DNA from: Ophelia neglecta
Taxonomy: Eukaryota
Direction of reading: 5' to 3'
NCBI GenBank assembly: GCA_965285935.1
Contig: OZ260664.1
Span: 81,902,001-81,966,000, forward strand
DNA length: 64,000 bases
Positions 8,403 through 41,089 of this stretch are shown one piece after another; position 1 is the stretch's first letter; every line of letters begins with the position of its first letter. The position numbers were made by a program, and so were the translations under genes. The notes below the pieces were generated by a model, which was given only the letters and a program-made list of their open reading frames with translations, was not told the origin of the DNA and did not search any database.

Positions 8403-9647
8403 TTGTGAGGGAGTAGGCCACAATCTACCATCTGTTTTCTTCCCCTGTACTGTTAAAGCATGGAATGTCCTTCCCACTGCCCTGACCCTGGCAAAGACCC
8501 TTAATACCTTACGTGCCAAATTGTCGGCAGGCCAAGCCTATAATTCAAGTTAGTTATTGTAGCAAAGAATGAATATGTACAGAACAAACTATCGATCAGG
8601 TACAGACATTAAAGTATACAAATATGATAGTACAAAATTCATGTTTAACACTAACCTACTATAACCTAGGGTCAACAAGGATTGAACCCCTAGAGGGGTA
8701 TGTGCTATCTTATTGAATGGAATTTAATTGAGTTTATTGATAGCTATCAGGTGATTAAAGCCAAACCACAGGATCTCAATTTTAAGTTGAGCTTGACTTT
8801 CCCATGGAAAGGAACATGAATTTTGGTCTAGAGAGCGCCTTGAGCACCTTTTCATATGCCCCCTTTAACTTTTGTCAATTTTTTGGAAACTAAGTCAAGA
8901 AAGGCTACAGTGGGATGGAAACAAATGTTTGCCAACTTATCTAGTTGGTCTTACTAAATATAATATGGACATGCAAACAAGCTATTAATGTACGTGATAT
9001 GCCAGTTGAGCCTATATTGATTCTTTCCAAACGATAGTTTTGAGGAAATTTAAGTGCCTGTGACCACTGGCACTAGGCAACTTCAATGATATGTTACCCG
9101 GTACTTGAAGAGTGATGCCATCCGTTGCCTATGCCTGTGAGCCCTTTGCTGTCTAGGCAAGTAGTCAAATTATTCCTGAAACAGAAACAGAAATACATGT
9201 ATACTTCTCACATGAGTTTATCACAATACTTATGCAGAAATAAAGTCATTTTGGTTTGTACTTTTTTACATTCACCATTTTGGCGAAAATAACCCCATGT
9301 TTCCATGGCAACTCAGTCGCCTGAAGAAGGGTTAATTGATATTCAATGAATATCAGTTCATGTCGCTTTACTTCTAATGGGACCTTATAAAAGTATTTTA
9401 TATGAAACTGGACAAGGCATGGTGACATTTTGTTGAATTGAATTCACTTTTATCTTAAGATGGACGAATAAGAATTTTAATCCACTGAGATCTTTGCTAT
9501 ACGCACATGTGCCTGTTGAAAGAAAATTATTATTATATATTAAACTTTTAAATAGCTACACAATAGTAAATGTGAATATGCAGCTTGAACTCATTAATTT
9601 TTCAGGGTAGATATTGACTGGTGGACATGAATTGACTGCCAACTAAC

Positions 9648-9926
9648 ATGGCTGACGCTGCATCCAATGAGAGCTATGAGCTGAGGAGCAGGGTTAAAAG
9701 ACCTGGCAGTCTGAAACCGCGAGAAAGGGATAAACAGAAAGATGAAAAGGGGTTGCAGAATGAAATGTCTCTAGCCGGGGATGAAGATAAGACTGCTTAC
9801 GTGTGGACATTTCTTTCTGTTGTAAATGTGCTCATTGGATTGACTGTTATGATGATTATAGGACATAGATACTCTTCCTATGTACACCTTCTGCATGAGA
9901 ATGATATGTGGTTCTCCTCAATCAAG
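9648..9926 (+). CDS. DPY19L3: DPY19L3 alternative first coding exon 1A (93 aa: N-tail, TM1, LHENDMWFSSIK)
   Basis: Acceptor tttttcag ending 9605; in-frame TGA upstream of the ATG; AAG|gtaact donor in phase 0. Confidence 0.82.
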
Positions 9927-12900
9927 GTAACTCAAAAGATATCATATATCATATAGAGGGGGCGAAAGGAGCAGGGATAAAGCTATAAATTATAATTGAT
10001 GAGTTCAAAACTCATTACTAGAGGAAAGTATGGGCTCTTTACCGATTTCATGGGCTTTCAAGCTGTTCTGAAAAATATCAATTTTCCAAAATTAAATTAA
10101 GAGTAAAATATTGAAAGAACATACATTTTTTTAATCAATTTGAGATAGGGTAAGCACTCAATTATTCAATGGCCCATTCCTCTTTGACTATCTCTTTAGT
10201 TTTTTGCATGTGAGCAAATTACTCTCTCCTTGATGTTTAAGCCATAGGTACTTTCTTGGCTATTACAGGCTAGGAAAGTAAGCTTGCTAGGTTTTGAAAC
10301 TGATAAAAACTATCAAATATTTAGCCTAATCCAACTCCCCATTCTGGTTTGATCTAGAAGTTATTCATGATGCCAATGCAATGTTATCCATGTGATTACA
10401 TGTACTTTACTAATCAAAAGATAATCTCTCACAAATCTTCTCATTTGAAACAAGCTGCCATGCTTTATAAATTCATTGTGAATGTAAGCCATAATGTAAA
10501 ATTTTGTCAGTATTGGCCTATACCTTTACAATGTTTTGCCATCCGACTTTATTCAACATTATGTTTACCCACACCAATTATGTTCAACCTCTCAGAGAAA
10601 GATGTTGGAATAGATTGTGATGTCGACATTTTCAAGTTGTTGGATACCTTAAGTTTACTTTTGGCACTAAATTGTGGCCAATCATTTTTTCAGTCTGGTA
10701 AAAAATCTGCTATATCTGGTAAAGCTAAGATTGAGGCCTAGTCTTTGTTAAAGTTTCTTCAAAGCAGCGTATTACAAAAATAAAAAACTTTAGCCTATTT
10801 CCATTTCTTTATTCTTTGGAATATGGCTCGGTCTGACTTCTCTGATGGAAAAGTATTGTTGAAAAATATTCTAGTATATAAAAACGTATTCCTGGCAGGA
10901 TTCAAACCCAGGAAAAGAGTTTTCAAAGCCTTTGCTCTAAACCAATCAGCCATGGCGGAATGTACATACCGGTGGAAACAGTTGGCTAACTACGCTGTTG
11001 TGTTCACAATACGTAGGCTGCAGTGGCCACTGTGTACTGGAAATGACCATTGGCCATGTTGGCACTTTGATCACCATACTAGTGATCTTCTAAACCAATT
11101 ATCCTCTAAAAAAGTATCACCATATTACTGAATCATCTACTGTCCATCTGTAAAAGTGGTTTCAACACTTGTATGGTCATATCACCACGGTGTATACTTG
11201 TGACAGCGGGCTCAATGCCCTCTTTTAATCGCCACGGTGCCTACTTGTGACAGTGGGCTCAAAGCCCTCTTTATAGTGCTGCCTCACTGGAGTACCTGCC
11301 GTAGACACCAGACAGTGAACCCCATACTTACACTGGGTTGACCAGTCCTGATTCTACCCCGAAATATCTGGCTTGCTATATATAAGAGGTGCATGCACCT
11401 TGGATCCTTGTGTTTACTACTACTTGGGGGAAGTAGTCTTCTGCAAACATTGGACATGCATCCTGAAGTAGGTTGTTTTTTAAAGGGAATAATTGCAGAG
11501 CAATTTTTGGAATTCGATAGGAAATTAGAGCCCCAAATTCTGAATTTGGGGTTGTGAAGTGGCCCCCGCATTGAGATTAGGGCCCTTTTGCTTTGTAAGG
11601 TGGTGGGACAATTTCCGAATTTTTTTTGGGATGTGATATCCCTTGAACCATTCTGGGGATAATTTCATATCTGTATGGTTGTCTTCCATGGACATTTGCA
11701 ATGTGCTGAAAAGATTTTGGCCTGATCCAGAAAAACTATATGGCTGCCAAGGGCAGTCATTTACAATGTTGAAAAATGTCGTCTTGTTAAGGCCTTACGT
11801 TGCGAGATAGGCATATCAAATATCTTGAACACTAATTAATAGTAAATCATAAACAAGGAATCCAGTCATGACCTCCAATTTGACCTTGGGTCTTTTTCTC
11901 TAGGTCTCATTGTGGTTCAGCATATTTCATGGAGGTCTAAATAGCTAACAATGCAAGAAAGACATACTGGATTTATTGAAAACTAGGAAGTCCTATGCAA
12001 GGAATTCAATGCTGATCTTGTATTTGACCTCGGGTCTCATTTTGTAGATCAAATTGAAATTAAGGCTTTCTTTTGATAGTCTGGATCATCAGAGGTGCAA
12101 GATAGACATACAAATGTATTGACCACTAATAGGAACTCATAAAGTGTAGTGAATTAGCTTTTTTCTTTTTTAATATTCTTTAACAGAGAATAAAGAAAAT
12201 GAACACATTGCCCTCATTTTTATTCGTCTTACCTGCATGGTGCCTTATTTGCTATTTGCATTTATGGTCTGTGATCCCCTGTCTGCCCTTTAGATAGTTC
12301 AGTCACATTTGTACCTGGGCTCTTATACAGCTATTTAAATAGATACAAATGGTCTGGATGAACCTTAGGTGTAGGTGTGGTGTGGGAGTGTTATAAGAAG
12401 GGTGTTTAGCCTCTTTTTCTATTCCAGTGTATCTGCAGGTTTTTGTTTGGTAGTAGAAGAGAAGAATTTGCTGCTGCTGTTTCAATTGACCAGCATCAGG
12501 CCTGTAATCAACATGTACCAAGTTAAAAGAAGTGCACTTAGTTATCTTTGTGTGCCTGAAATATATCAGTTGAATTTCACCACGTTCACGGTCGATATTT
12601 TGGCAGAATTTACAATTGTTTTGGGGGAAATATGTTGTATACAGGTCTCAAGTTATACTTTGAAACATCATGATCAAACTCCTTTATTTCCACGGCGGTC
12701 TCTGTTAGTCTACCAGTTCATATTTCTTATTGATATTGCATAGAACTCCGCTATCTATCAGACAACAGTGCCATCCATGAAGCTGTGCAGCAGCCATTTT
12801 TCTCAACATCAGGATGAGAGAATGGTAGGGACACTTTCAGCTGGGCATGGGGATTCACCAATTGAACATTGGAACTTATTTTACTGGCATTTCTTCTTAC

Positions 12901-15900
12901 CTGTCAAAGTTACTGAAACAAAATACATAGGATGACTGCTGCGTGAACAAGCTTTGAAATATGTCATTTTCATTTTGGTTTGATATGCCTACATGGGTTT
13001 TTTATGAGAATCCCAGCCCTGCAAAATGACAAACCTAGCCTTGCTATTGATGTAGTCATATACAGAACTATCCCCTGCTAGATTAGGCCTAGTGATGTCG
13101 TCCTGACTGGCACTTGATTTGCATCTGGGTACTAGTAGTATTGTATTTAATATTGGGCTTATGTTGTTCATTGTTTGATAATGCAGGCATTAAACTTCTG
13201 ATACATGAATTCTGGAAATTGTTGATTTGTAATGTGAATTAATCTGTACACTGGCAGATGATTCCCAGTTGATGGTATTTACACTGTACACTGTACATGT
13301 ATGGATATTCAGCATGCAACTAGAACTACAGGGGTCCCTGTGATGTAAGGCCACCCCTATATCCAAAATAAGTGGCCCTACATTGCAGGTGTCCCTCCAT
13401 TGGAGGTACTTTAACATGGACAAGAATTTAAAAACTGTCCAGCCATCGCAGGTGGCCCGTCATCGGAGGGGCCCTACATAACAGGGACCACTAGTATTGA
13501 ATTATTGATTGTTAAGTTTATGATTATCTTATCTAATGATCATTGAACACATGTGGATACTAAGTATGGATATTAAAATAAAAATGTGGAACCTGTTGTG
13601 TAAGTGTCAGTAAAACCCAAAAAACAAATCCATCTGGATACAGAGAGCATCAGTCTTCCAGGACATATGTCTCTTGCTTGTCATTTCCATGTCCCCTCAG
13701 CATTCTCCAATAAACTAATTATAAACAACATTTTTGATACACTTTATTACTTGGATGGCTATTAAAATTAATGCAAAATTGAAGTACATTAATTTGCCTG
13801 CCACCTGTTTCATAGATAAAACAACTTACTCTCCACCATTTAGTAGTATGCTGCTGAAAGATATGGATCTAACCAAGCTCAACACTCCAGGTGTTGATTA
13901 GCACACATGGTGCCTTCATGCCTGGAATTTTTAACAGTATTTTTTTTCAAGTCCCTGATGTTAGAAACAAAGCTTTTGTATGTGGTGTGGCAAGATATAG
14001 TGGCTGCCCAATGAAAATGAATTTTTTTATTTAATTTGTCACATTGGGTTATGCATTGAAATGATCATTAATTGTCTTTATCTGCTATCAGATATGGACT
14101 CTCCCAGCCCATGTAGCCTATGAACAGCCTCTAATGTTTAAACTGTAATCACTATCATGTGTCCTAACTCTACTAGATATTACCGAAAGGGAAATGAGTC
14201 TTTTTTCTTCAAATTGAGCATCTCACAGATTCTGAGAATTCAAAATTTATTTGGCGACAATTTCAGTTTGAAAAAAGATCTGGATAAATACTTGCAATAT
14301 GTGTTCAGACAAAATTAAAGCTGTGCGACCTCAAGAAGTGCCGACAATACATGGACTGCAGATCAAGGCGCCTTGCACCTTGTTGAATTAACATCATGCC
14401 CAGAAATCACGGTACCCCAGATTGGAAAGCCTGTGCTGCATTTCTGTCCTTTAGTGTCATCAGATTTGACCTTGACCTATATTGTTAAGGTCAAAATAAG
14501 AGAAAAAGTTCTGCACAGTTTAGATGATTTAGATAGCTTTTAGAAAATGAAATTTTTTTACCCAATTTAAGCTTAGGTAGGTTTTACAAATGGATCCCAG
14601 TAGTCAATGATCGCTAGGATTGCCAGTTCTAAATAAATATATGATAACTGTTGTATGCGTATATTTTGGGATTCAACCAGAAAACTGATAACTGGAGTTT
14701 GCTTTGTTTTATGTAAAGGTTCATATAGCATATTAATAATCATCATGAATCAAAACCAAAGTACAATAATGAAATTGATTTTAAACTAACCTAGTAAGTT
14801 TTAATTTACTCTAGGATACCTAATATGCATTTTTAAATATTACTGGTGGTCAGTGGTAGGTATTTAGACATGTAGCCTCCTATTAGAAAAATTAATGTAA
14901 AAAATTAGTAAAGCTTCCCCCATGCACGCCAGTGAAGATGAACACTGAAAGCCTGCTGATTTAGACTAGTTTTAGGCCAATTACTTAAGCGTTGGAAAAA
15001 ATGAGACAAAGTTAGTTCTTCAGACGGTTAGAGGTCAACCAGTCGGAGAGGATTACCAGCCTATTAATATTTAAGGAGCAAGCCATTTCCAAATGGCTCA
15101 TATAAAATTTTCCTGGTAAAGGAATTAGATAACCTGACTTTTAATACAACTTCATGTGTCAAACATGAAAATCATGCAACTTACCTGTTTGGGTTCTCAG
15201 CCTTTCTGTGTGAAAGATACTGTCTTTTCCAGTGTTTACAATATCACATTTTAACTGATAGACAGTGTGGAAAAGATACCATTAGAAGGTGACATGCTCA
15301 CATCAGTACTGGCGTGCATTATTACATTTAATAACAGCACCAGTTGCTGTTGAATTTGGGTAGTTTCCAAAATCCTTGGCCAATTTCATTAAATTTGTAT
15401 TGCCCCATTGCTTCAAGAAAGCAATCCTCCTTGTGGGCCATATTAAGCCTAGTCTGCCGACAAGGATTTGAAGGAGATCTACGATTTTAGTGTCTCGTAT
15501 ATCTCGGGTTCCTTCAAGGAAGCCCCACTGATCAATATGTTGTGTTTTCTGAATGGCTAGGTCTGGATTCAAGCAGCTCTTCAGGGGTTTGGAGTGGGTT
15601 GGAAGTTTACATGGCTACCTGTGATAAGTCGATTAGTGCATTACTGTACCAGCATTATAGTACAAAGTCTGATCAATGCTGGATTGGGAATAAATTAAGA
15701 CACATGCACGGCAGAGTGGATAACAGATGGTGGGATCCTCCTTTATTCATGAAATAGATAGATTTGTGATAGAGCCTGTCTTACCCAGATGGTGCATGCT
15801 ATGTGAAACTCAATCAAATTGATTGTTTTTTTGTTTCTGTAAATGCTGTTAGTGTTTGGTCAATCAGGTAACTGGACTTCAGGCCTAGAGCAGGAATATC

Positions 15901-18900
15901 ACCGGCTTGTAACATGGTTCGTAAAAGAAACCAGCATTCTCCAGGCAAATCTAAGCAGCCTAAATCCAAGGAGATTACTGGCAATAGTCACATTGATGTT
16001 ATTGATGAGGTGAACGTTTATCTTCCGTGGCGGGAGATAGGACGATGTACATGGATACTGTTAGGGATTTTAGTGTGTATCAGTGTGGCCTACGGCCATG
16101 GCTGGTATATGAACAAACTACATGAAAATCGCTTGTGGTTTTCTAACATTAAGGTGAGGTTAGTTGTGACCTGGCTTTTCATTTCCCTGTGACTATATGA
16201 TTATACAGACTGATCATTGGTATTTGCCCTGTTCCCAGTGGCTCTATTGACATAGAGAGCAGCCCCTTGAAGTTTGCTCCTGTTAGTAGATTTCATCCAA
16301 ATAATTTTGTGCACTACTGGCCAGAAATAGGCATTGTAGTTTGATAAGTATCCTTTCGTGATCAAAGCATGAAATAAATAAGTGTATTGTTTCTTAAATG
16401 TTTTAATCCTTTATATAATTGTTCAAATGTCCAGGCCCTGCAGTATTGTGCCAATGGGACAGGCTAATCCCATATAGGAAGAGAAAATATAGGATGCATG
16501 CTTCAAGATGGCTTTGCATTATTATGACATTCTCATATTGACTAGGCCCCCTTTATACAATGATGCAAGCAATTAGGGCCTCCAATTTTTTTTCAGCTAT
16601 TAGATAGGGCATAATTTCCTTTGATTCCTCACATTGAGACTAACTTTTTAAGGTAGAATTCTGGTACTTTTTACTATGCAAATCTCAGCACTGTTGCTGG
16701 TCATAGTCTGAACATCAGACTACTCCTTCCACCACCACCCCCCCCCCCCCCCCGTCCCCCCACCCCCAGCCCGCCCCTTCCCTGTCCTGCACTCCATCAG
16801 ATAAAGAAAGGGCAGCAGTTTGAGGTTTCCATTCAGAGTAACCCCAGTTTCCAACCCTAGGTATGTAGCACCCTACCCTAATTGGATGCACCCTCCCCCC
16901 CCCCCCATATAATAATTATGGTGTTGGTAGTATGTTTCAATTTGATGCATATACACGAATGTGAATTTATTATATTGAATGTATAGGTCATGACCTATCT
17001 GTTAAAAAAATACTTAAATATTTTCATGGTTTTTCTTAAAAGTAGAGAAAGCCATTGGCCTTGATGACCTGCATACTGTAAACCAGGAAATTTTCGCGAG
17101 CAGGAAATTTTCGCGAGTTTCGCGAATAGCAGACACCCGCGAAAATTACCTGCTCGCGAAAATTCCGTGTCTAAATACTACTAGTTAAATCAGTTGCAAC
17201 GCATGACATACTTCACTTTCAATTTCAGAAGCGCGAAGTTTTCCTGGCGCGAAAATATCCTGTGGGGATTCCTGCGAAATTTTCCTGTCGCGAAATTTTC
17301 CTGGTTTACAGTATTAAATTAACTCAAGCTTGTGATTGTTGTTTGATTCTGACAATTATCAACCACATAACATGTACTCTCTGGCAAACCGTCTAATATA
17401 ACTACACTGTCTGTCTAACACAGTTAAGATGTTTAAAGGTTTGTTTTATTGATTTCAGGAGGTGGAGCGTGAGATTTCTTTTCGTACAGAATCAGGCTTA
17501 TATTACTCCTATTACAAGCAGATGGTAAACGCTCTGTCTATATCTGAAGGTAAGTTTATATTGTCACAACTAACATACCAGTCTGAAATCATGTGGCAAA
17601 TTTATACAGGTAGAAATAAATTATTACTGTAATTCCTCTAATTATTTAATAATTAATACACACTAGTTTCTCTAATTGTTTTAATTCATACACTCTTGTT
17701 TCCCTAATTTTTTTAAACATCTTATTATTGGTATAACTATGTGGAATCCTATTGTGGTGCCTGAAAATTGGCATTCTAAATGATAATGTTGGCTCTGCCT
17801 CTAATTATTCATTTTACAGGAATTATGATAATTTAGGTGTCTTAAATGTCGGGGGAATTACATTATTACATACATATCAAAAAGATAAAGGAAAGACTTA
17901 AAAAATATATAAATGTATACTTTAATAACACCTAGTGTTGTTAATGTAAATAATAGACTACATGATAACTATTAGTCAAGAATCTTGACAGCTAGACTTT
18001 TCCTCATTTACTAAAAGCAGTAGATTATTGATCTTTTTGTATCTGTGGTATTTTTAAGAGCCTGTTTCTACCTTATCTTTATGCACAATTGGGAATATTT
18101 GAAAATGTCCTGGTTTATATTAAAGTAACATGATTTGGTGCTAGATTTTGATGAGAGACAACATGTGTTTGATGTTTAGTAAATTTGGTTTACACATACC
18201 CCGGTAGGTCTCAATCAGCTGATGTATGACAACCTCACTGAGTACAGATCTACGATCAATGTTCTGGCTCGTATGAATGTCTACCAGGAGGTATTTCTGG
18301 CCATCATCTACAGAACTTTTCCTATTTTACAGGTAAAAATAATAATAATTCATGCTGTATTTTGTATAGCCTTATTGTTTAGAATTTCAAACATTCTGTG
18401 CAATGAGAAGTACCTGAACTTTTGATGTATTCTTAAACAAGTTGACGGGAGTTATAGATTGCCTGAATGAGCTGCTTCTCTGAATACATCATCTTTTCCA
18501 TCACTTAAGTCTGCACTTGACCATATTGTAATACAAGAAGGCTTTTTTCATGCTCCATATCTGGCATATTTTGTCTTTTTGACAGATTCTTATGGCCACA
18601 TGCCACACTGTTTTGATCACTGTATTATATGTTAAGTGTAAGACCACCTCCATAGTCAGGGCATAAAATTTGCATGTCCCTTGGATGGTCACAATTCACA
18701 GGTTTCACTTTTATTCAAAATATCCCCAAAATTGGACACAGTGCAAAATTAGTGTTAAGAATATAAACGCCCTCATCATTCCCTAACACCCGGAACTGTG
18801 TGTTTGATATATGATAATTTTGGGAACTACATTTTTGACCCCTCCTCCCCTACCCAACCCACCTAGCCATCCCTAAGGTTCATAATATATTTGGGAAGTG

Positions 18901-21900
18901 TTGTGGCTTATGCCTAATAATGTGTGTACATGTTCACATGTGTCAGAGTTGCTATTCTGTGTCTCAAACAGACATCTCAGTTTAAATCAAATTCCCTAGC
19001 CCCACAACAAAACATTGTGTCACTCTCCCTGTGACTTCCAATATAAACAAAGTTCTTGAAAACACTATAAATGTACTCACTATATATAATACACTGTGCA
19101 ATTATTAGATCTGATTCAGTATGCTGCATGACTTTGTTTGAAAATTTTTGATCCCCTCCCCTAGTCCCACCCAAGTGCAGGGATTTTCCTGGGTGAAAAA
19201 CCAATGGGACAATTGTCCCCATTGGGGTAAGAACAATGGGACATTTTGGAGAACAATGGGACATTTGGATCATGTACTTTCATCAAATTTAAAAATAATG
19301 AAGCAAGATTAGTCATTGCCTTACTACAACGTTTTGGGCGATAAAAGGGTAGATTCACGACCACGAGGTTACGGGCGGATCCGATCCTGACCGGCGAATC
19401 CCGAAGTAGGCGTTTACACGGCTTCCGATATTGCAAAGAGTGAAACATATATACGGCTGCGTTCGAGAGCTCATGCATGCGTTGCTACACTCGAACTAAC
19501 GTAACACGATGTTTACAGTGTATTGTGCCGTAAAATTTGTGCAGATCTTTCAACAAGACGCAATGCCTTAAATCGGATGCGTCAGAAATAAAACAAAGGG
19601 CCAAACTGGCGCAAGTATGAATGGGTTAATGCGTCACTTGAGAAATCATTGCGTCAGAGACGCCAAAACGCAGCCTCGGCAAATCCCTGCAAGTGGCTCA
19701 AAATATCACCCCAAAAGCTTGACCTCAGGACCTGTGCATGCATTACCTTTCCTATGGTATGCTGGATGGCCATGTTGGGAAAAACAGAAATTTTAACACC
19801 CTCCCCCCCCCCCTCCCCCCCCCTCTGGCAGCATACAGACAATCTCAATTATATACCAAAACAGGAGCCACATTAGCTTCCCCCAGTGGCATGGCAGTGT
19901 GGGACAAGGTTAGATAAGGTCGAGGGACAGCACATATACTGGTTGTTAAGCTCCATGGCCCCTTAATTTTTTCTTGTCCACCTCTTTGGATTTTTTTTCA
20001 GTATAAGTTAACTGATAATGCATCATGGAACAGTAACATTTGAAATTATAGTTTTTATTATGGCAAAAAGGTCAAATTAACAAAAAAAAAATGGAAGTAA
20101 CTAAGCAAAGCCTTGACACACAGAAACTATTCAGCCTTTTTGATGTGTTCATCATTCCATTCCTTTTACTGTGGAGGCATATTATGGACACTATAGTTTC
20201 ATTTAGACTTTGTCCTGAGTGGACTGTCAGACAGACATGTTTACTATCCTTTTCCATAGGTTGGGGGAGGGGGGGGGGGCATGAATTTCTAAACTACTTG
20301 TTAAAAATTGCAGCCATGGCTCAATTAGTAACAAAATTAAATGTTATTTTAATTAAAAGTATATAATTTATACATAATCTATATTATTAACTTCTTCCAG
20401 AGCAATTTTGAGCCAGTGTACTTCTACATAGATGTTATATTTGGTCTCCACGGGCTGTTGGTGTGTGCCATCTACCTAACCTCCTGGCTCCTCAGCGGGA
20501 CCTGGGTGGCCGGGCTGCTCACTGCTCTACTCTACATCTTCAACAAGTAAGTTCAGGGATACTAATCACTGCTGAGACAAACGCCCAGGGACAGACGGCT
20601 TTTTCTGAATAAATGCACTGCCTCAGCTTTTGGTTGTTTATGACAAATCAGTCATTGGGACTTGTTCCTTAACAATGGAGAGAATGACTGCACTCTTTTT
20701 GATGCTACCTGTAGACAGCTGGGGCATAATTCCCCCCCCCCCCCCCCCGAAAACATTACGCTAAGCACCTTTCAATTAATATAGTGTGGGATTTTTCAAT
20801 GCCTCTAATTTTCTTGTTCATTTTACAAACAATTTTATGGCAATTCAGGGACAGGGAGGTGTGCCATATACATATATATCAAGTCTACTGGTATATACAT
20901 ACAATGAGTATCTGCTCAAGGCTTTCAGTATCACAAACCTAGGCCCTGGGGCCTATCTCATGCCGGAGCAGCCACATCTAGCACATCAGCGAGCCTTACA
21001 CAATCAGTTGGCAGGGGGAGGGGGGGTGGGGGGGGGGAAGCTACCACCTTTCCAAAGGATGACTACTGAAACTGGTATTGAACCCGAGTCACCAGGGTGT
21101 GAGCTCAACTTGTTAGCACTGTACCATGTCTCCCCCAATATGGGATTTATGTGGTGTACAAGGGGAGGTGAGGGTCCTCCAGTTGTCTAGGTAAACCTGT
21201 GTTATCATATGGGTTATCTGCCAATGTGGTTAATGTGTCATATGTAATCACGCTGATTCGTTATGATAATGTATAATTTATTGTAGAGATGATACATTAA
21301 AAAGGTTGTTTCCTCTTTTAACCAAACAAGTTGATATATCAGTACATGGCTTAAATGTAGTGTTTCATAATGTTAGCTACAAGTGTGAATAGAATAGAGA
21401 AACGGACAATATAATTATGTTTAAGATACCAGCACAAATTTAGTTTTAACAAGTATTAGCTTTAATCTTTCGTACTGGATGCAAATTATTTTCCCAATTG
21501 TGTACATATTTCTAATTTCTTTTTGCTAAAACCATATAATCACACAACAAATCAATTACATATTGTGTGTGGCTAGGCGAGTACTGGCGACACAGTTTTA
21601 TTAAAGCGGAATAGGGCTAACAGCTTTCTCTCAGCCTCTTGTTCTATGCATACGTTAGTCGATGTGTGTGTATTTATAAGAGCCGACGTGGGCTGCCTAA
21701 ACCTGTGAAAAAAAACCTTGATCAAGGTTGGAAAAATGCCAAAGTTTGACCAGGTCCCCTTGAAATTGGTCCGTATTTCCTGGATTTTTTAAAACTCCAA
21801 TCTCTCAATGTATTGGTATTGGTATTCCCCCACAATCCATTTCAGAAAAATTATTTATTCTCCGATTTATCTCTCAAAGAAGAATATATACATTTCTCAA

Positions 21901-24900
21901 TGTACAAACATTAGTATGTAAACAATTACATGTAAATTAGTATCCCTAGACTTACTCACAAATTGTAGGCCTGTGTCTGAATTCACATTATGTTGATAAT
22001 ATGGAATTTTGATTAAGTAAAAGAAGGAGAAGAATATGTGTGTTATTCATGATTGTTTTAGCTTTCTTTCTCCATAACTGAAGAACAAGCCAAACAACTT
22101 CCTTAGTACAAACAACACAATGTGGAAAGTAACCAGCAGTGCTGCTGAATACACCAGTAGTATGTCTAACATCAGATATTGCCACCAGGGCATGTCCAGC
22201 GCATGAGCTCTCAGGTAGTCTCCACCATGTTTGATCACATGATCTACCCAATAGACCAATCGTTTGGCAGGAGCCTGGGGTTGATTTCTATACACGTTTG
22301 AAGCTGCCATAATAGAATTTTTAAAACTTCCATTGTTGATCACAAAATTAATGTTATTCAGCAAATCCTGAGGCTCAAACTCCAAGATGTTAACAGTCAG
22401 GGAAAATCCTCGATCCTTGGCTCGACCTGCATTAAAGTGTTGGTCCCCAAACATTGGAAATGATATCATAGGAACTCCGTTGTAGAGAGCTTCAAACTGG
22501 CTGTTCATGCCAGCATGCGTTATAAATAGTTTAATGCGTGGATCTCCCAGTAAGTCTGCCTGAGGTATCCAATCCATCAGCTTGATGTGAGATGGCACAT
22601 TCTCTGGAATAGAGGACAGTGGACATTTCCAAATCACTCCATATTTGACCTGCGCAATTGCTTTGAGTAATTGGTCAAAGTATTTTTTTGGTGTCATGCT
22701 TGAACCTCCAAAGGAGATTAGGATGGTCCCCTCTGGGTGCATTTTAAGAAAATCGTCCATTTCCTTTGACACAGGTTTGGCCGATTTCACCTTGTGACCA
22801 CCGATGTAAAATTCATTTGGCATCCGAGGGCTTGGATAGTCAAGGACAACATCATTTGCTAAGAGCCAGATGATATTTTCTCCTGCAATGGTTGATATAG
22901 ATTTAAAAGGTTTCTCAGGCACATATTTTGTGACCAGTGCATCATCAGCGTTGTAGACCCAGGTCAATGCATTAAAATCAATCATGTCCCACAAGTTTGT
23001 TAGGCGTTGGAGAAACGTCATCCCTGCTGATATATCGTGATTATTAGTCATCATATATGGTACAAATGATGGCAATGAAGGATTTCGAGCCAGCCATGGG
23101 TTGTAGGCAGCACTGTATCCGATGTGTCTCAGGCCAAGCTTGTGTGGAAGGATGTAGTAACACGCCGTGTGGGGGATTGTATCCACAATGACTAAATCAA
23201 TATCTAGTGAGCGAATATCCTCAAGTAACTGCTGGTCATTCAACAAGTTGTCACAGAATATATCATTGCCTTGTTGCATCTCAGGACTTTTATTAAAAGT
23301 TTTGAATGGAGTTTTCACTATTATTTCAAATATTTCCTCTGCTGTTAGCTGTGTAAGCTGGTACATATCTGGTTTTGAGGCTTTAAAAGTCAAGACATTG
23401 GTCTTAGGATTCTTTTGCCGAAGCTCTTCTAAGCCGGGGAATGTTTCAGTCACCACTATGAACGTTTCATGTCCTTTTGCTGCTGTGATTTCCCCAGCCA
23501 TAGCCATCATCTCATCAACATGGCTGCCCCATTGAAAAGGCAGCAGCAAAATCTTTTCTCCTGCTACAAAACTAAAACATGCATAAAGTAAAACAAATCC
23601 TGCCAAATTAAACATTGTCCCAGCATGTATAGTCCTACGGAGTTTCCTTTTAAGTGGTTGGGACCAAATAGTCAGCTACAATGCAACCTCTATTTCCTTA
23701 ACTTCAACCAGATTGGAACTTTAACCAGGTTGGTGTTTATTAACTAGGCTAGGACTGACCTAGTAGTGATCAGTAGTGTAAACAATCAAGTTCACTTACA
23801 CAGGGGAGTATACTGGGTATGTCCTCACTGTTGGTAGTTTGTTGAATAGCCCATTTCTTTTGGTGGAGGGGGGGGGGGGGGTCGCTGGGGGTGTGGAGGG
23901 AGCACCTTTTTGGCAATCTTGCTTTCTTTCTTACGATGTCTTGTCAAAATAAGGCTATGGCCACAGACCAGACACCTTTTCTATAACCCCCCTCTCCCCC
24001 CCCCCTTCTACTTTACATTCATCCAGGCCATTTCTTTGTTGTGTACCTACATGTATGTTAGAGTCTATATTTGAAGCCAATGACTCTATTACCAGTTATA
24101 TTAACCAAGTATGCTATAGTGCATATTTTCCGTTTAAAAATATTGCCACCTCTTCTAGCTGTGCTGCAATAGGTCATGCATGGTTGAGTTAGTTCAACAT
24201 AAGATAATTTCAGTTGTAGGTATATTATGCTCCCAGCAGTGCTTTTTATACAAGCTACATAAGGTGCAGAGTACTGCAGCCAACCCAGTAACCGGGGCTC
24301 TGTTCTAAGCACATATAACCCCATGTCTAGAAAGGCTTCACTGTTTGCCTGTAAAATTAAGAATTTGTTATAATATTTTTGTAATAGATCAAAATTGCTC
24401 GAATTGTTCCAAAATTTCAGTCACTCTCTACTTCTCAATCTAAATTTGAAATGCATTATAGTAAAAAAGCATTTGACAGATAATTATCATTTTTTCTTAT
24501 ATGGTATAGTATTTATAATAAACCTCGGAGTGTAGTTTTCATAAGATAATAATAGTTCTCTTACACTGGAACAACCAAACCAAAGGACTCGCTACTGGCC
24601 TGAACGGGATTTGCTAACTCCATTATAGCGCGACACTTACGCCCCTAGCGAGCTATCGCGAAACTAATAGAATCTTTTTTAGATCCATATCACACAAAGT
24701 CCAGCTTTGTTTGCAGCACAATATCCATGAAAGTGTTTGAAAGTGTATGAAAAAGTGAAAAGTGATTAAGTCAGTCAACATTTTTTCAATATCTGGAATT
24801 GCATTAGGAGTAGAGACTATGTGTTACTCACATGGCTGGCCAGCCTACCAAAGCCACCTAAATAGCATGTTAATCACACCTAGACAGAATAAACACTGCA

Positions 24901-27900
24901 GAGACTGGCATTTGTTGGACTGCTTGGATTACTCTTTAACTCAATCAGAAAACTTGGATAAGATATCCCCAACAGTACACAAACCTACCTTAGTTCAACA
25001 GTTAATTAATGGGAGATCAACAACAATACACAAAACTACCTTAGATAAACCAATTATCCAGCCTGGTTAATTGTCCCACAGTCTAGGGGGGTAGGGGTAG
25101 TAGAAGGTTGATAGTTATTTCCATATGTCAGGGAGGACCATAAAAGCAATACAAGTCTTTGCAGTACACATTTACCTACACAATGACACCTGACTTGTGG
25201 GTCTATAGGAAATATTGATAAAGAAGTTGAATTCAAAATCTACACCTGTACCATGCCAGTTTTGTATGACGGGAACAAACCAGTCTAGGGGGGTAGGGGT
25301 AGTAGAAGGTTAATAGTTATTTCCATGTGTTAGGGAGGACCATAAAAGCAATACAAGTCTTTGCAGTACACATTTACATACACGATGATACCTGACTTGT
25401 GGGTTTAGAGGAAATATTGGTAAAGAAGTTGAATTCAAAATATACACCTGTAATCGGTTTTAGATCAATTTACGTGCAATGATAGGCCATCACTGTGTCG
25501 ACTTTCTTTTCAAGATTTTGGGTTATTCCCGATAATTTAAAATAAAAAGGGTAAAATGAATTGTTGTATATGTTTAAAACAAGCGCAAAAAATGGGTCTA
25601 TAATTGGTTTTCTAAGCATCAGTCTGCTAAAATTGGTAATTCGATTTAATCCTCCATTGGTGAAAACTGAAGACTGCTGTTCTCGCGCGAGTTCGCATGT
25701 TAACGAACATTGCAATTTCAGTTAACATGGCGGTACATAGGTATCGCCCCGGAGTCGCGAGTCCTTAGTTTAGTGGTTCCAGTCTTACAGAACTTTCTTA
25801 TTTTCATTAGTTGAGGAATCTTGGCCCATGTTTGTTCATGTGTGTGTGTACATGTACATGTATAATGTGCATGCGATCTTATGTGCATTTGTATATGTTT
25901 TTAGATATGTATATAAGTGCACATGTATAATGAATGAAAGGGATGGTGTATGGGTATTGTCAAAATGGGTTTTCATTTGAGCAAGAAGCATATAAAGTGC
26001 CTTTGATTAGTTGATTAGTTATGCTATGCCACAATCTGGAAACTGGCTTGGAAACAGTGTGTAATATGATCTGTGGAGGATATAACTTGTAATGCCTATA
26101 TTGATATATTTAAGCTGGAGAATCAGAAATGCTATTTAGAAGTGTCCATGGTAATATATCAGAGTAATATTTACGAATTACGGTACAAACTGTGTAACTG
26201 TGATACTGTGTACTGAGGGGAGTGTTAACATTTGTGCAGGTCTGTTGATATCCTCCTTGCTTGCTAAGTCCATGGTGCCATTTCTGTCCAGGATTTCTGT
26301 ATAATGTATGGCAGAACAATTTTAGAGAGCCGGATATTTCCGCTCATTTTGCTATGATGTATTTCCGACGGTCTCTATTCTTGCTGGGGTTCCGTCCTGG
26401 CGCCCACTCCCTGAGCGTGGGGGCTGCAAGCGTAGTCTCGATATCTAGATAGTAGGGGTACTTTTTGGGCTTTGATCTCGTGCCAGAGAATTCCCGAATA
26501 AGGGGTACATTTTCGTTTTTTTCTCCTGAGAAATTGAAAAAAAGGGTCTTTTTATGTGCCTCCCAAGAAATAGAAATAAAGGGTTATTTTTACAAGCATG
26601 TGCAGAGAAAAGGGATGGAAAGTTACTATAAAAGGGGGTTAGGTGCTACCTGGAGCCTGAGAATAGGGGTATGATATTTCATCAAGCCTAAGTTAGGGAG
26701 GTAAAATAATTGGAAAACCCCTCGATAGCCTGTGATAAGAAGGTGAAAAATTCAATGCCTTTTCTGAGATAAGGGTCAGTTTTCAAAAGTGGTGAACAAG
26801 CATAGGTACCCCCTTAAATGGTGGAGTGGGGGGGGGGTACCATCAACATACTAATTGATTTTATATCTAGTATTAAAAAAAAAACCATTGATTCAATACT
26901 GTTTTCTTACAGGGTGGACACCACTCGAGTTGAGTATGTTGTCCCGCTGAGAGAAAGCTTTGCCTTGCCGTTTATTTGGGGACAATTGTTCTTCATCACA
27001 GTGTACCTAAAGCATGACTGTGGCAAAAGAAAACAGGCTAGTAAATCATCTAATAATAATTATAGACTTTACTGAAAAACTTGTTTTTTTTTTGAAGTTG
27101 TATGGTGAAATGCTTTTGTCTATTTTGATTAAATGAATAATATGTCTTAACCATCTAGATGCTAGCCATAGTGGGAACTCTGCTGTGTACATTTTGTTTT
27201 GCCATAACTTGGCAATTTAACCAGTTTGTGTTGCTGCTACAAGCCATGGCCCTGTTTGGAGTACAAGTGTTAGAACTGGTTCCTCTACACAAGGTATCAG
27301 CCATTGCTACTACTACTACTAGTGTTAATATGATTTGCACTATCTTTCCTCTCATGGGTACCTGTCTTGTTCTTTGTTCATGTAAGCAGCCGTCCAGTCT
27401 ACCTAAATCAGCACCCAGTATTCCCTTTAATATCTAGACATTGATAGCAATAGTATTTGTTGTAAATACAGCAGGATTCATTGAGTTCTTACATGACTGA
27501 CTAACATCAAAATTCTTGCTTTCGGACAAATATTGTACAAAATACATGTATGACTTAGTGTCTAACATTACAAAATATTTGCTGATTGATACACATTCCT
27601 TCTCTGTTTCAGATAGCGACGTTGTATGCCATTCAGACTGTGACAATGTTCGGTGTGTTCATTTCCCAGTTCATGAACACCATGATATTAACCGGTCTTC
27701 TTCCCAGCTTTCTAATAGGTGCTTGTCTCATAATGATGGCTCAGGTAAGTCTGTTATTACTTGCTCCCCCACCTCCACCCCCACTACTTTCAATTTAAAA
27801 AAAACCATGGAGGTTTTGAAATAAAGTACCAGTGGTTATCATATATTGTGAGAGGTGTTTGATCCCAAGATAGGATATACACTACTAATATATTTCCCAT

Positions 27901-30900
27901 CAATAAGTGACCTTTATGACATTTGTATAAATTCTGCACATTGTCTAAAGAATCAGGCCATTTGCTGCTTTGCTGTTAAAAGAGTTTCATCCAACGCCAC
28001 ATAATATCAAAGCCTCAGAGTAGGTTATTCAGGCTTAGCATTTTTCTTAGGCCTAGCTTGTTCAACTAACCCCATTACTTACCCAGGGATAATCGCCATA
28101 TCACTCGCTAGGGGTACACCTTGGTGCAACAATGACTACCCGGGTAGTTTAGTTTAACATTCCTGGTACATATCTCATGCTAGACTCTCTAAATTCTAAA
28201 AAAAATTGTTAATTAGTCACTTTGAATAACGAAGTACTTAAAATATTTATATATACATATATATGAATTATTAATCATGAAAATTGACTTAATCATTAAA
28301 AGTACAATGAAGAAAAATAATATGATTTGCTCTGTATAATCTTTTTGCAGAAGAAGCAGTTTTTAGCTGGTGAAGGGGTGATGTTAAATGTTGGCAGGAC
28401 ACTGGGTTCTGTTATCCTAGTCTTCGTTCTAATGATCTCATTTAATAAATTATCAAAAGTGAGTCACATTCTTCATCATTATTGAATAAGTAGGCTTTTA
28501 AAAAACCAAAATAGTGCCCAAATGCAGTATTAAATCTTTTCTAATAAACCAGATCAATTCCAAACTTGCTTCGCCCACAGTCATCCCCTTGCTTGGCCCA
28601 CAGTCATCCCCCTGCTTGGCCCACAGTCATCCCCCTGCTTGGCCCACAGTCATCTCCTTGCATGGCCCACAGCTAGCCCTTGCCTGGCCCTTAGCTAGCT
28701 CCTTGCTTGGCAAACAGTCATCCCACTGCTTGGCCCACAGTCATCTCCTTGCATGGCCTACAGCTAGCTCCTTGCCTGGTCAACAGTCAGCTCCTTGACT
28801 GGTCCATAGCCAGCGAGCTTTGTCCACGGTCATCTCCTTGCCTGACCCACAGCTGGCTCTCTTGCCTGGCCCACAGCTAGCTCCTCTCTCTCAAGCACCA
28901 AGTACTACCCACACTACTCCCAGCTCAACACATCTCATTCAACCCCCATCCATGCCGCCCCCTCCACTCCCCTCCCGAGCCATCCTTGTTGGGTTCGTTC
29001 TTTTTTTAAGTGTCCCCCTCCCCACCCCCCAAACACATACTCTCTGGATGACATAAATAAAAACACTACAGTCAGGACCTTCATCTTTGGCCTCTCACTT
29101 CCCATTCCTACTGTCCGCTCTCCACAAACGTGCCCCCCCCCCCCATCCCATCTAACCTCAGTTCATTATTTCCTTAGTATAGAGGCATGGCTGTTTATAA
29201 ACCTTGATGAATTCATTTTCAGATTATATTTCCCGACCAAGCAGATGAGCACATATACAAGTTTGTTCTCTCCAAACTGGGCTTTGAGCAATCTAGGTAT
29301 GAGTCAACTCTACTGAACTCTACTGAAGAAAGGAATTTACTGATACACATTGGATAAAAAGATTACGAAATATGATGTGATCCTCGTGAACAATATTGAC
29401 TGTATAGTTATTAGTTGAAATTATCTCTTTTCAACAAAGTTTTTTTAAGGTATTTTTGTTCCTTATGGTGCAGATAGGTTGTAAATACTATTAAATAGAA
29501 GCTTATTAGCTTGTTTAAAATCTGTATTTCAGTCTTTAGTTTTGATGTATATAATTGTTAAAGCTCTGTACACGTTTTGCAGAGACTTTGATGTCAACCT
29601 GTACCTGTGTAATGGAGCATTCACTATGCTGTCATGGGACACCTTTGAGAGACTGACAGGGAGATTAGCCTTCCCTCTCTATGCTGTGGTTCACAGTGTG
29701 GCACTGATGGCACTAGCTGTGGCACTGTTACAAAAGTGGAGGCAGGTTATTAATAAATTAAAAGATATGACCAGTGGACCATGGTCAGGTGGCACGTTGA
29801 TTAAGATACTATTTGTTCTCACAGGTTTGGGAAGATAGACAAAGGAGAAGATGAGAAGCAGCGAGAGAGAAAACATTGGTACCAGAGCCGCCCAGAGCTG
29901 GCCTATCATATCAGTAAGTACCAGAGCCGCCCAGAGCTGGCCTATCATATCAGTAAGTACCAGAGCCGCCCAGAGCTGGCCTATCATATCAGTAAGTACC
30001 AGAGCCGCCCAGAGCTGACCTATCATATCAGTAAGTACCAGAGCCGCCCAGAGCTGGCTTATTATATCAGTAAGTACCAGAGCTGTCCAGAGCTGGCTTA
30101 CCAAATCAGTATGTACAAGAGCAGGCCAGAGCTGGCCTATCCTATCAGTAAGTACCAGAGCCGCCAAGTGCTTGCCTTTAATGTCAGTAAGTACCAGAGC
30201 CGCCCAGAGCTTGCCTATCATATCAGTAAGTACCAGAGGCGCTCATAACTGGCCTGTCTTATCAGTAAGTACCAGAGCCATCCTGAGCTTGCCTCTCATA
30301 TCAGTAAGTACCAGAGCCACACAGAACTGGCCTATCATATCAGTAAATGCCACAGCCGGCCAGAGCTAGCCTATCATATCAGTAAGTACCAGAGCCGGCC
30401 AGAGCTAGCCTATCATATCAGTAAGTACCAGAACTGCCCAGAACTGGCCTATCATATCAGTAAGTACCAGGGCCACTCAAAGCTGGCCTATCATATCAGT
30501 AAGTGCCAGGGCCGCTCAGAGCTGGCCTATCATATCAGTAATGACCACTGTTGTCCCAGCTAGCATATCATATCAGTGGCATAGCAGTGCTAGTCCTGAA
30601 CTGACTTTCATATCAAAATGAACCAGGGCATTCTAGATCAGGCCCATCATATCAGTAAGTACTCAAGCCACCCGGATCTGATATCTTTTACAAAATATTT
30701 ATATGAAATAATCAGGAGTTCAGATTCTTCAAAACTCTTTCAAATAGACATTCTAGCTTTAAAAACAACAGCCACAAACTGTGCGATTCTGCTGTAAGTC
30801 AATTAAGATTACTATTTCAGTCCAGGCGGTGTTCTTTGGAGTCCTGGCTGTCAGTACATTAAGGATGAAGTATTTGTGGACCCCCTACATGTGTATACTG

Positions 30901-40953: not shown

Positions 40954-41089
40954 NNNNNNNNNNNNNNNNNNNNNNNNNNNNNNNNNNNNNNNNNNNNNNN
41001 NNNNNNNNNNNNNNNNNNNNNNNNNNNNNNNNNNNNNNNNNNNNNNNNNNNNNNNNNNNNNNNNNNNNNNNNNNNNNNNNNNNNNNNNN
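40954..41089. other. Assembly gap (136 N)
   Basis: Run of N. Confidence 1.

What the first reader, a model, noticed from the sequence alone, without database searches (positions are those of the whole stretch)
9606..16153. Two paralogous, mutually incompatible first coding exons swap the N-tail, TM1 and catalytic-loop entry of a C-mannosyltransferase
Seen: exon 1A (9648-9926) and exon 1B (15914-16153) each have their own ATG preceded by an in-frame stop. Each encodes a basic RxR-containing tail and one hydrophobic helix, and ends in the same motif (YVHLLHENDMWFSSIK vs YMNKLHENRLWFSNIK) at the same phase-0 donor. Either joins exon 2 (EVEREISFRTE). They are highly diverged yet both intact, which suggests an old duplication kept by selection. 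None of the six AGs within about 60 nt upstream of the 1B ATG allows an in-frame 1A-1B join, so the exons are alternatives. Established (recalled): the Glu of RTE is the catalytic residue in C. elegans DPY-19, and vertebrates divide WxxW/WxxC acceptor preference among DPY19L paralogues. Inference: this lineage may diversify localisation, partners or acceptor selectivity from a single gene using a variable-first-exon design.
Basis: partly seen in the sequence, partly recalled or inferred. Interest (0 to 1): 0.8.

Follow-up and report, generated by a model that had tools for sequence, protein, structure and literature searches.

The report
Two alternative first exons in DPY19L3
A worm gene for the enzyme that attaches mannose to tryptophan carries two old, diverged copies of its first coding exon; both are kept intact in a distant second species, so the gene very probably makes two enzyme forms differing only in tail, first membrane helix and the start of the catalytic loop, though no RNA data were available to show it.

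Summary
Exon 1A (9648-9926) and exon 1B (15914-16153) each have an ATG behind an in-frame stop. Each encodes a tail and one hydrophobic helix, ends in LHENxxWFSxIK at a phase-0 GT donor, and joins exon 2 (17459) in frame. All six AGs upstream of the 1B ATG are out of frame.

New evidence:
- An unrelated public contig (L015) holds the same order, 1A-type, 1B-type, exon 2, with both exons intact.
- A third species has an intact 1B.
- Only exons align between species. Synonymous sites are saturated (pS 0.71-0.81) and pN is 0.22-0.42, so both exon types are under purifying selection.
- 1A is not the suspect copy. It is the canonical type: 71 first exons from other animals all resemble 1A more than 1B.
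- Two other species have a single exon 1 within 10 kb either side.

The catalytic Glu and the residue that sets sequon preference (Tyr here, L3-type) lie in shared exons, so a change of acceptor preference is not favoured.

The only sequencing runs found were DNA. Splicing of each exon to exon 2, and the promoter layout, are therefore inferred. This is a new member of a known kind, tandem-duplicated alternative exons. The scan had noted this stretch only as this same finding.

The parts
9606..9647 (+). Possible 5' leader of exon 1A, behind an acceptor-like tttttcag ending at 9605. It contains a two-codon upstream ORF (ATG AAT TGA, 9627-9635). Whether this is an acceptor or lies downstream of a transcription start is unknown.
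   Evidence: Sequence read. No RNA data.
9648..9926 (+). Exon 1A coding part, 93 codons. It encodes the cytosolic tail (53 aa), TM1 (about residues 54-72) and the start of luminal loop EL1 (LHENDMWFSSIK). It has a strong Kozak context (A at -3, G at +4) and the phase-0 donor AAG|GTAACT. This is the canonical type.
   Evidence: 71 first exons of other animals score higher to 1A than to 1B. The orthologue in L015 at 10001-10303 is 47% identical over 58 aa. pN 0.42 against pS 0.74.
15853..15913 (+). Leader of exon 1B, with six AG dinucleotides (all out of frame with the ATG) and an in-frame TAA at 15869.
15914..16153 (+). Exon 1B coding part, 80 codons. It begins with MVRKR, which is invariant in three species. 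It encodes a tail of 41 aa, TM1 (about residues 42-60) and the EL1 start LHENRLWFSNIK, with the phase-0 donor AAG|GTGAGG. This is the derived type.
   Evidence: Orthologues are P0001/L013 (60% aa, 68.5% nt over the exon only) and L015 at 16629-16868 (48%). The 1B clade has support 99. pN 0.22-0.32 against pS 0.71-0.81.
17459..17548 (+). Exon 2, shared by both forms: EVEREISFRTESGLYYSYYKQM... The Glu of RTE (17489-17491) aligns with the catalytic Glu71 of C. elegans DPY-19.
   Evidence: Pfam Dpy19, 45.7 bits; alignment to PDB 7zlg; paper.
18189..33793 (+). Remaining shared exons of the DPY19L3-type gene, covering Pfam Dpy19 positions 56-626 and the C-terminus. They hold the equivalents of Ce Arg211 (TRVEY, about 26920), Tyr395 (NLYLC, about 29600) and Arg471/Leu474 (RMKY, in 30811-31002).

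Best explanation
The window holds the DPY19L3-type tryptophan C-mannosyltransferase gene of an invertebrate. Other follow-ups of this scan call it an annelid, which I did not test. The gene's first coding exon was duplicated in tandem long ago. Both copies, 1A and 1B, are maintained as protein-coding sequence. Each carries its own start codon and ends at the same phase-0 donor. Including both would break the frame, so each mRNA must use one or the other, spliced to exon 2. The result is two enzymes with an identical catalytic body (catalytic Glu, donor-binding arginines, sequon-determining Tyr). They differ in the cytosolic N-tail, in TM1 and in the first 12 residues of luminal loop EL1. These differences most likely affect where, when and with what partners the enzyme works, through tail and TM1, rather than which sequon it modifies. 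1B keeps an invariant N-terminal MVRKR, a di-arginine-like signal. 1A keeps the canonical TM1 and HENDMWFS entry but has a longer, more acidic tail. Shown here: the exon anatomy, paralogy, frame incompatibility, conservation of the arrangement and purifying selection. Inferred: that both 1A-exon 2 and 1B-exon 2 mRNAs exist. Also inferred, at roughly 55:45 against a shared non-coding leader with mutually exclusive splicing: that each exon has its own promoter. Any functional difference between the two forms is likewise inferred.
For: The anatomy and frame logic are shown directly by the sequence. There are exactly two exon-1 copies in the window and in the second species, and each is single-copy in the genome. 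L015, from another organism, has the same order: 1A-type at 10001-10303, 1B-type at 16629-16868, exon 2 at 19690. Its 1A-to-1B spacing is like the window's (about 6.3 kb against 6.0 kb). Its exons have ATG starts, strong Kozak contexts and GT donors in the same phase, and its AGs before the 1B ATG are again out of frame. Only exons align between the window and L015 (exon 2 at 78%, exon 3 at 79%, no non-coding match). Only the exon aligns between the window and L013. Synonymous differences are saturated while non-synonymous ones are not. 1A ends in the family-wide HENDMWFS motif, which continues directly into the EL1 loop of the DPY19 fold (Ce residues 49-60). It can therefore only be useful if joined to the DPY19 body. 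1B orthologues form a clade with support 99. The shared body keeps the catalytic residues. Two other species have a single exon 1 within 10 kb either side.
Against: There is no transcript evidence at all. The three runs that hold 1A are genomic DNA, with introns covered. 1A alone found no relative in the word search. 1A conservation rests on one other species, with 40-47% identity. Within the sequenced sample, 1B carries three non-synonymous variants (S18A, S57T, G61S) and one synonymous variant in 240 nt, no fewer than the listed variants in the flanking intron (classification by my own reading of the codons). This could mean mild constraint in this species. The promoter layout is unknown. 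Acceptor-like sites lie upstream of 1A in both species and of 1B in two of three, but such sites are common in AT-rich DNA.
Confidence: 0.75

Rival explanations
1. The same two alternative coding exons are chosen by mutually exclusive splicing from one promoter and a shared non-coding leader exon upstream of 9606. Transcripts that include both exons would be removed because the frame breaks (nonsense-mediated decay).
For: Acceptor-like sites with pyrimidine or AT-rich tracts lie 42 nt (window) and about 97 nt (L015) before the 1A ATG. They also lie before the 1B ATG in the window and in L013. Frame incompatibility of adjacent duplicated exons is a known way to enforce exclusivity (background literature found).
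Against: L015 has no convincing pyrimidine tract before 1B. No conserved upstream leader was found between the window and L015. ATG-bearing 5' exons usually have their own promoters (general knowledge).
Confidence: 0.33
2. One of the two exons is an unused relic of a partial duplication, and only the other is spliced to exon 2.
For: No RNA evidence exists for either junction. 1A had no word-search hit. 1B shows 3 non-synonymous and 1 synonymous variants in one sample.
Against: Both frames, start codons and donors are intact in a species so distant that introns and synonymous sites are randomised. An unselected frame of 80-100 codons would not stay open or stay recognisably similar. 1A is the canonical type, and 1B is intact in three species.
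Confidence: 0.05
3. Both exons sit in one mRNA. 1A acts as a long upstream ORF that runs out of frame into 1B and only regulates translation of the 1B-initiated enzyme.
For: All acceptors before 1B are out of frame, so a 1A+1B mRNA would terminate the 1A frame early.
Against: 1A is conserved at the amino-acid level specifically in TM1 and in the family motif that continues into the DPY19 fold. That pattern is expected of a part of the enzyme, not of a regulatory uORF. Such an mRNA would be a target for nonsense-mediated decay.
Confidence: 0.05

Closest known systems
Tandem duplicated exon substitution events / mutually exclusive homologous exons (e.g. human and Drosophila sets in PMC9741552, PMC8373072, PMC5740500)
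   Same: Adjacent homologous exons of similar length and the same phase, old, both under selection. They are enriched in membrane proteins and give isoforms identical except for one homologous segment.
   Different: Here the duplicated exon is the first coding exon with its own ATG, so choice may be made by promoter use rather than by splicing alone. DPY19 does not occur in the main text of PMC9741552. No held paper links DPY19 with mutually exclusive exons, and the one paper holding both DPY19L3 and 'alternative first exon' is unrelated.
Variable-first-exon genes with shared constant exons (UGT1A, clustered protocadherins; recalled, not tested here)
   Same: The N-terminal part of a membrane protein is swapped while the downstream exons are shared.
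   Different: Only two variable exons are present. The variable part does not hold the substrate-binding determinants. Individual promoters have not been shown.
Vertebrate DPY19L1-L4 paralogues
   Same: Diversification of C-mannosyltransferase function within one lineage. The gene here is L3-type, with Tyr at the Ce Leu474 position (PMC12990085).
   Different: Vertebrates diversified by whole-gene duplication, which changed the sequon-determining residue. Here one gene varies only the tail, TM1 and EL1 entry. This genome has just one further DPY19 gene, on contig C2, with a different exon structure at this point.
Lepeophtheirus salmonis DPY19L3 isoforms X1 (850 aa) and X2 (728 aa)
   Same: Annotated N-terminal isoforms of an invertebrate DPY19L3.
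   Different: They differ only in the extreme cytosolic tail and share TM1 and the HEN motif. This is not a duplicated-exon swap.

Membership tests
DPY19 C-mannosyltransferase (Pfam PF10034, GT-C) | Match to the Dpy19 profile above the curated cut-off along the gene | tested here: met
   nine exon matches in the window cover profile positions 21-626, each above 27.2 bits; exon 2 scores 45.7 bits. Exons 1A and 1B alone give no Pfam hit; one search places their last 12 residues at Ce 49-60 and one search places exon 2 at profile 26-54, so they sit at the very start of the profile (my inference).
DPY19 C-mannosyltransferase (Pfam PF10034, GT-C) | Catalytic Glu (Ce Glu71) in the RTE motif of EL1 | tested here: met
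   Exon 2 reads EVEREISFRTE. One search aligns RTE to Ce 69-71. One search gives the role of Glu71.
DPY19 C-mannosyltransferase (Pfam PF10034, GT-C) | Donor and peptide residues Arg211, Tyr395 and Arg471 | tested here: met
   TRVEY, NLYLC and RMKY, compared by eye with the Ce numbering derived.
DPY19L3 subtype | Tyr at the position of Ce Leu474 (disfavours Trp at +3) | tested here: met
   RMKY in 30811-31002. The rule comes from PMC10154233 and PMC12990085. The nearest named full-length relative is L. salmonis DPY19L3.
DPY19 C-mannosyltransferase | C-mannosyltransferase activity of either isoform | not testable with these tools
   Needs expression in a CMT-null cell line with a TSR or RNase2 reporter.
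Tandem-duplicated alternative (mutually exclusive) exons | Adjacent homologous exons, same strand, same phase, each compatible with the shared neighbour exon | tested here: met
Tandem-duplicated alternative (mutually exclusive) exons | Joint inclusion is not viable | tested here: met
   (window). L015 was checked by reading.
Tandem-duplicated alternative (mutually exclusive) exons | Both copies conserved and under purifying selection in other species | tested here: met
Tandem-duplicated alternative (mutually exclusive) exons | Transcripts that contain one exon or the other, never both | not testable with these tools
   No RNA run for this organism was served. The three holders are DNA.
Variable-first-exon cluster (UGT1A/protocadherin type) | Each variable exon has its own promoter | not testable with these tools
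   Needs CAGE or 5'RACE.
Variable-first-exon cluster (UGT1A/protocadherin type) | An array of many variable exons | tested here: not met
   Exactly two copies in the window and in L015.

The most novel reading that the evidence does not exclude
The two first exons send one C-mannosyltransferase to different membranes or partners. One possibility is an ER-retained MVRKR form and a second form, with the acidic tail and canonical TM1, working at another membrane or translocon context. This would be a single-gene counterpart of the way mammalian DPY19L2 works at the inner nuclear membrane of spermatids (recalled, not tested). If so, TM1 and the N-tail, not the active site, would be a natural handle on client choice in C-mannosylation.
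Probability: 0.15. Interest if true: 0.6.

Novelty: new member of a known kind. Interest (0 to 1): 0.38.

Why it matters
C-mannosyltransferases are thought to diversify by whole-gene duplication that changes sequon preference. Here one gene has kept, over a very long time, two versions of only the N-tail, TM1 and the first residues of the catalytic loop, with the whole active site shared. That gives a natural pair of constructs for asking what TM1 and the cytosolic tail of a DPY19 enzyme do: localisation, partner or translocon association, stability. Structural work leaves this part largely uncharacterised. It also adds a GT-C glycosyltransferase to the list of membrane proteins with tandem-duplicated alternative exons. 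It does not change the general picture of either field.

Tried and rejected
1. RNA evidence. The look-up of sequencing runs with exon 1A returned three runs of one sample with kind unknown. Read laying on 15300-21200 showed contigs running through the introns, so these are DNA. No junction, transcription start or expression information could be obtained, and both tools are capped at one call.

2. The word search with 1A found nothing in the 51-163 aa range. This says nothing about longer proteins.

3. Pfam gives no hit for 1A or 1B alone. The PDB sequence search with 1B gave only chance matches.

4. The profile word search with the three 1B sequences found no further clear 1B-type exon. A scan of JGI metagenome contigs found none. 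The breadth of the duplication is therefore known only for three species.

5. Loci of P0033 and P0064 came back without DNA. L018 has one exon 1 and no exon 2 within 10 kb, so it is uninformative.

6. The tree of 48 columns does not resolve when the duplication happened relative to other taxa.

7. No non-coding conservation was found that could mark a shared leader or promoter.

8. The spliced protein models (1A + exon 2..., 1B + exon 2...) were deliberately not joined, searched or folded. Exons were searched one by one by reference.

9. The relic reading and the uORF reading were considered and rejected (see rivals).

10. The 136 N at 40954 were left alone.
Full report
**Observation.**
- Exon 1A runs from 9648 to 9926, 93 codons. 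An in-frame TGA lies at 9633 and the donor is AAG|GTAACT.
- Exon 1B runs from 15914 to 16153, 80 codons. An in-frame TAA lies at 15869 and the donor is AAG|GTGAGG.
- Both end in LHENxxWFSxIK, and both donors are phase 0.
- Exon 2 begins at 17459 after tttcag and reads EVEREISFRTE, so either exon joins it in frame.
- The six AGs at 15851-15892 lie 61, 46, 31, 25, 23 and 20 nt from the 1B ATG. None is in frame, so 1A cannot be read through into 1B.
- Each exon has one strongly hydrophobic 19-mer, a strong Kozak context (A at -3, G at +4) and an RxR.

**The gene.** The window is contig C7:81902001-81966000 of a 762 Mb assembly.
- Pfam Dpy19 (PF10034) matches nine further exon stretches between 17444 and 33095.
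- tblastn with the salmon-louse DPY19L3 (P0047) carries the gene on to 33793.
- The genome has one other DPY19 gene, on contig C2. In that gene the homologous FERDRHFSHLSGLERELAFRTE lies in a single exon.
- Alignment of P0047 to the solved C. elegans enzyme (PDB 7zlg) puts the Glu of RTE at Ce Glu71. It puts the last 12 residues of exon 1 at Ce 49-60.
- Glu71 is the presumed catalytic base (PMC10154233).
- The shared exons keep the equivalents of Arg211 (TRVEY), Tyr395 (NLYLC) and Arg471.
- At the position of Leu474, which sets the +3 sequon preference, they have a Tyr (RMKY). That is the DPY19L3/L4 state (PMC10154233, PMC12990085).

**Paralogy.** Each exon is single-copy in the genome. The only other hit of each, in a six-frame search of the whole assembly, is its partner (E 0.03-0.1, 31% identity). 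A profile built from 77 exon-1 sequences finds exactly two copies in the window, at 80.8 and 60.7 bits. Nothing else scores above 8 bits.

**Which exon is canonical.**
- A full HMMER search with 1A found 71 proteins at E < 1e-3. Nearly all are short ORFs called on genomic contigs of other animals. They end ...LHENDMWFSNIK and then read into an intron.
- Every one of them scores higher to 1A than to 1B.
- The one full-length named hit is DPY19L3 of Lepeophtheirus salmonis.
- 1A is therefore the family-typical exon and 1B the derived one.

**Conservation of the pair.**
- The best 1A hit, P0002, lies on a 39 kb ENA contig, L015. That contig carries a 1A-type exon at 10001-10303 (47% identical over 58 aa). 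It carries a 1B-type exon at 16629-16868, which starts MVRKRG and is 48% identical. Exon 2 lies at 19690-19779 (90% identical).
- The order is the same and the 1A-to-1B spacing is similar. The exons have ATG starts, GT donors in the same phase and out-of-frame AGs before 1B.
- A third organism has an intact 1B. This is P0001 on Logan contig L013, 60% identical in protein and 68.5% in nucleotides over exactly the exon, with unalignable flanks.
- Between the window and L015 only exons align.
- Nei-Gojobori counts:

| Comparison | pS | pN |
|---|---|---|
| 1A, window vs L015 | 0.74 | 0.42 |
| 1B, window vs L013 | 0.71 | 0.22 |
| 1B, window vs L015 | 0.81 | 0.32 |

- Synonymous sites are at or near saturation while protein change is held back. 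Both exon types are therefore under purifying selection, and the duplication predates the split of these species.
- The three 1B sequences form a clade with support 99 on a long stem. The two 1A sequences are each other's nearest rows but are unresolved.
- Two other species (L016, L017) have one exon 1 within 10 kb on either side. In L017, exon 2 follows about 130 nt later. The duplication is therefore lineage-specific, not ancestral to animals.

**What differs between the forms.**
- 1B keeps an invariant MVRKR at the very N-terminus, plus LPWR, W.LLG and HEN(R/Q)LWFSNIK.
- 1A keeps the canonical (V/I)N(V/L)(L/V)IG... helix and HENDMWFS. Its tail is longer and neutral to acidic: 11 K+R against 11 D+E in the window, and 7 against 16 in L015.
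- The active-site and sequon-determining residues are all shared. I therefore expect the isoforms to differ in regulation, sorting or partners rather than in WxxW versus WxxC preference. This is inference.

**What is missing.**
- The only runs that hold 1A are three runs of one sample. Laid on 15300-21200, their contigs cover the introns, so they are DNA.
- There is therefore no evidence for either splice junction, for transcription starts or for tissue use.
- The same contigs show four variants inside 1B: S18A, S57T, G61S and one synonymous. The classification is from my reading of the codons. The changes are conservative, but this is not a picture of depleted variation.
- The choice between separate promoters and a shared leader with mutually exclusive splicing cannot be made. 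Acceptor-like sites precede 1A in both species and 1B in two of three, but such sites are frequent in AT-rich DNA.
- The spliced isoform models were not joined, searched or folded.

**Comparison with what is known.**
- Alternative homologous exons that arose by tandem exon duplication are a well-described class. They are old, conserved and enriched in membrane proteins (PMC9741552, PMC8373072, PMC5740500).
- No paper in the held library links DPY19 with mutually exclusive exons. The only paper holding both 'DPY19L3' and 'alternative first exon' is unrelated. DPY19 does not occur in the main text of PMC9741552.
- The salmon-louse DPY19L3 isoforms differ only in the far N-tail and share TM1.
- This is therefore a new member of a known kind.

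**Organism.** Other follow-ups of this scan call the genome an annelid. I did not test that.

**Verdict.** Old, selected, mutually incompatible alternative first coding exons are well supported by comparative evidence (confidence about 0.75). Expression and promoter layout are unproven. The suggestion of altered acceptor selectivity is not favoured. Interest is moderate.

Noticed in passing
window 17074-17311: All three DNA runs have contigs that skip these 238 bases (joint 17073>17312). The skipped stretch has word depth in the thousands. It looks like a high-copy short repeat inserted in the reference haplotype but absent in the sequenced sample, 147 nt upstream of the exon 2 acceptor.
   Followed up: no
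window 19172-19689: A second insertion/deletion difference of 518 bases between the reference and all three runs, again in very high-copy sequence, in the intron after exon 3.
   Followed up: no
G000:C2:83432257-83464581 (L014 about 2258-2356): The genome's second DPY19 gene encodes the homologous ...FERDRHFSHLSGLERELAFRTE in one exon. The exon 1/exon 2 boundary of the window's gene is not shared between the two paralogues.
   Followed up: partly
P0005 (63 aa, another organism): This ORF contains the exon-1 end motif twice (MATLHENDMWFTNIKV ... MATLHENDMWFTNIKV). It may be a local tandem duplication of the exon end, or an assembly artefact, in some other animal.
   Followed up: no
P0047 / P0076 (Lepeophtheirus salmonis DPY19L3 isoforms X2 / X1): The annotated isoforms of 728 and 850 aa differ only in the cytosolic tail before TKDSIFTSQMK and share TM1. 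This is an N-terminal variant of a different kind.
   Followed up: partly
window 16657-16915: A proline/glycine-rich low-complexity stretch (PPPPPPPPPRPP on +, GGGGG on -) in the intron between 1B and exon 2. Reads seem cut there (16718-16789). Probably a simple repeat.
   Followed up: no
window 4832-5448: Repeated ...SDLLHSDNSGVSSKLESW... open frames on the + strand upstream of the DPY19L3 gene. Not examined.
   Followed up: no
window 29825-30820: Another first-stage note reports about 20 tandem copies of an exon end plus donor inside this same gene. I did not examine it. It lies between the shared exons at 29512-29748 and 30811-31002.
   Followed up: no
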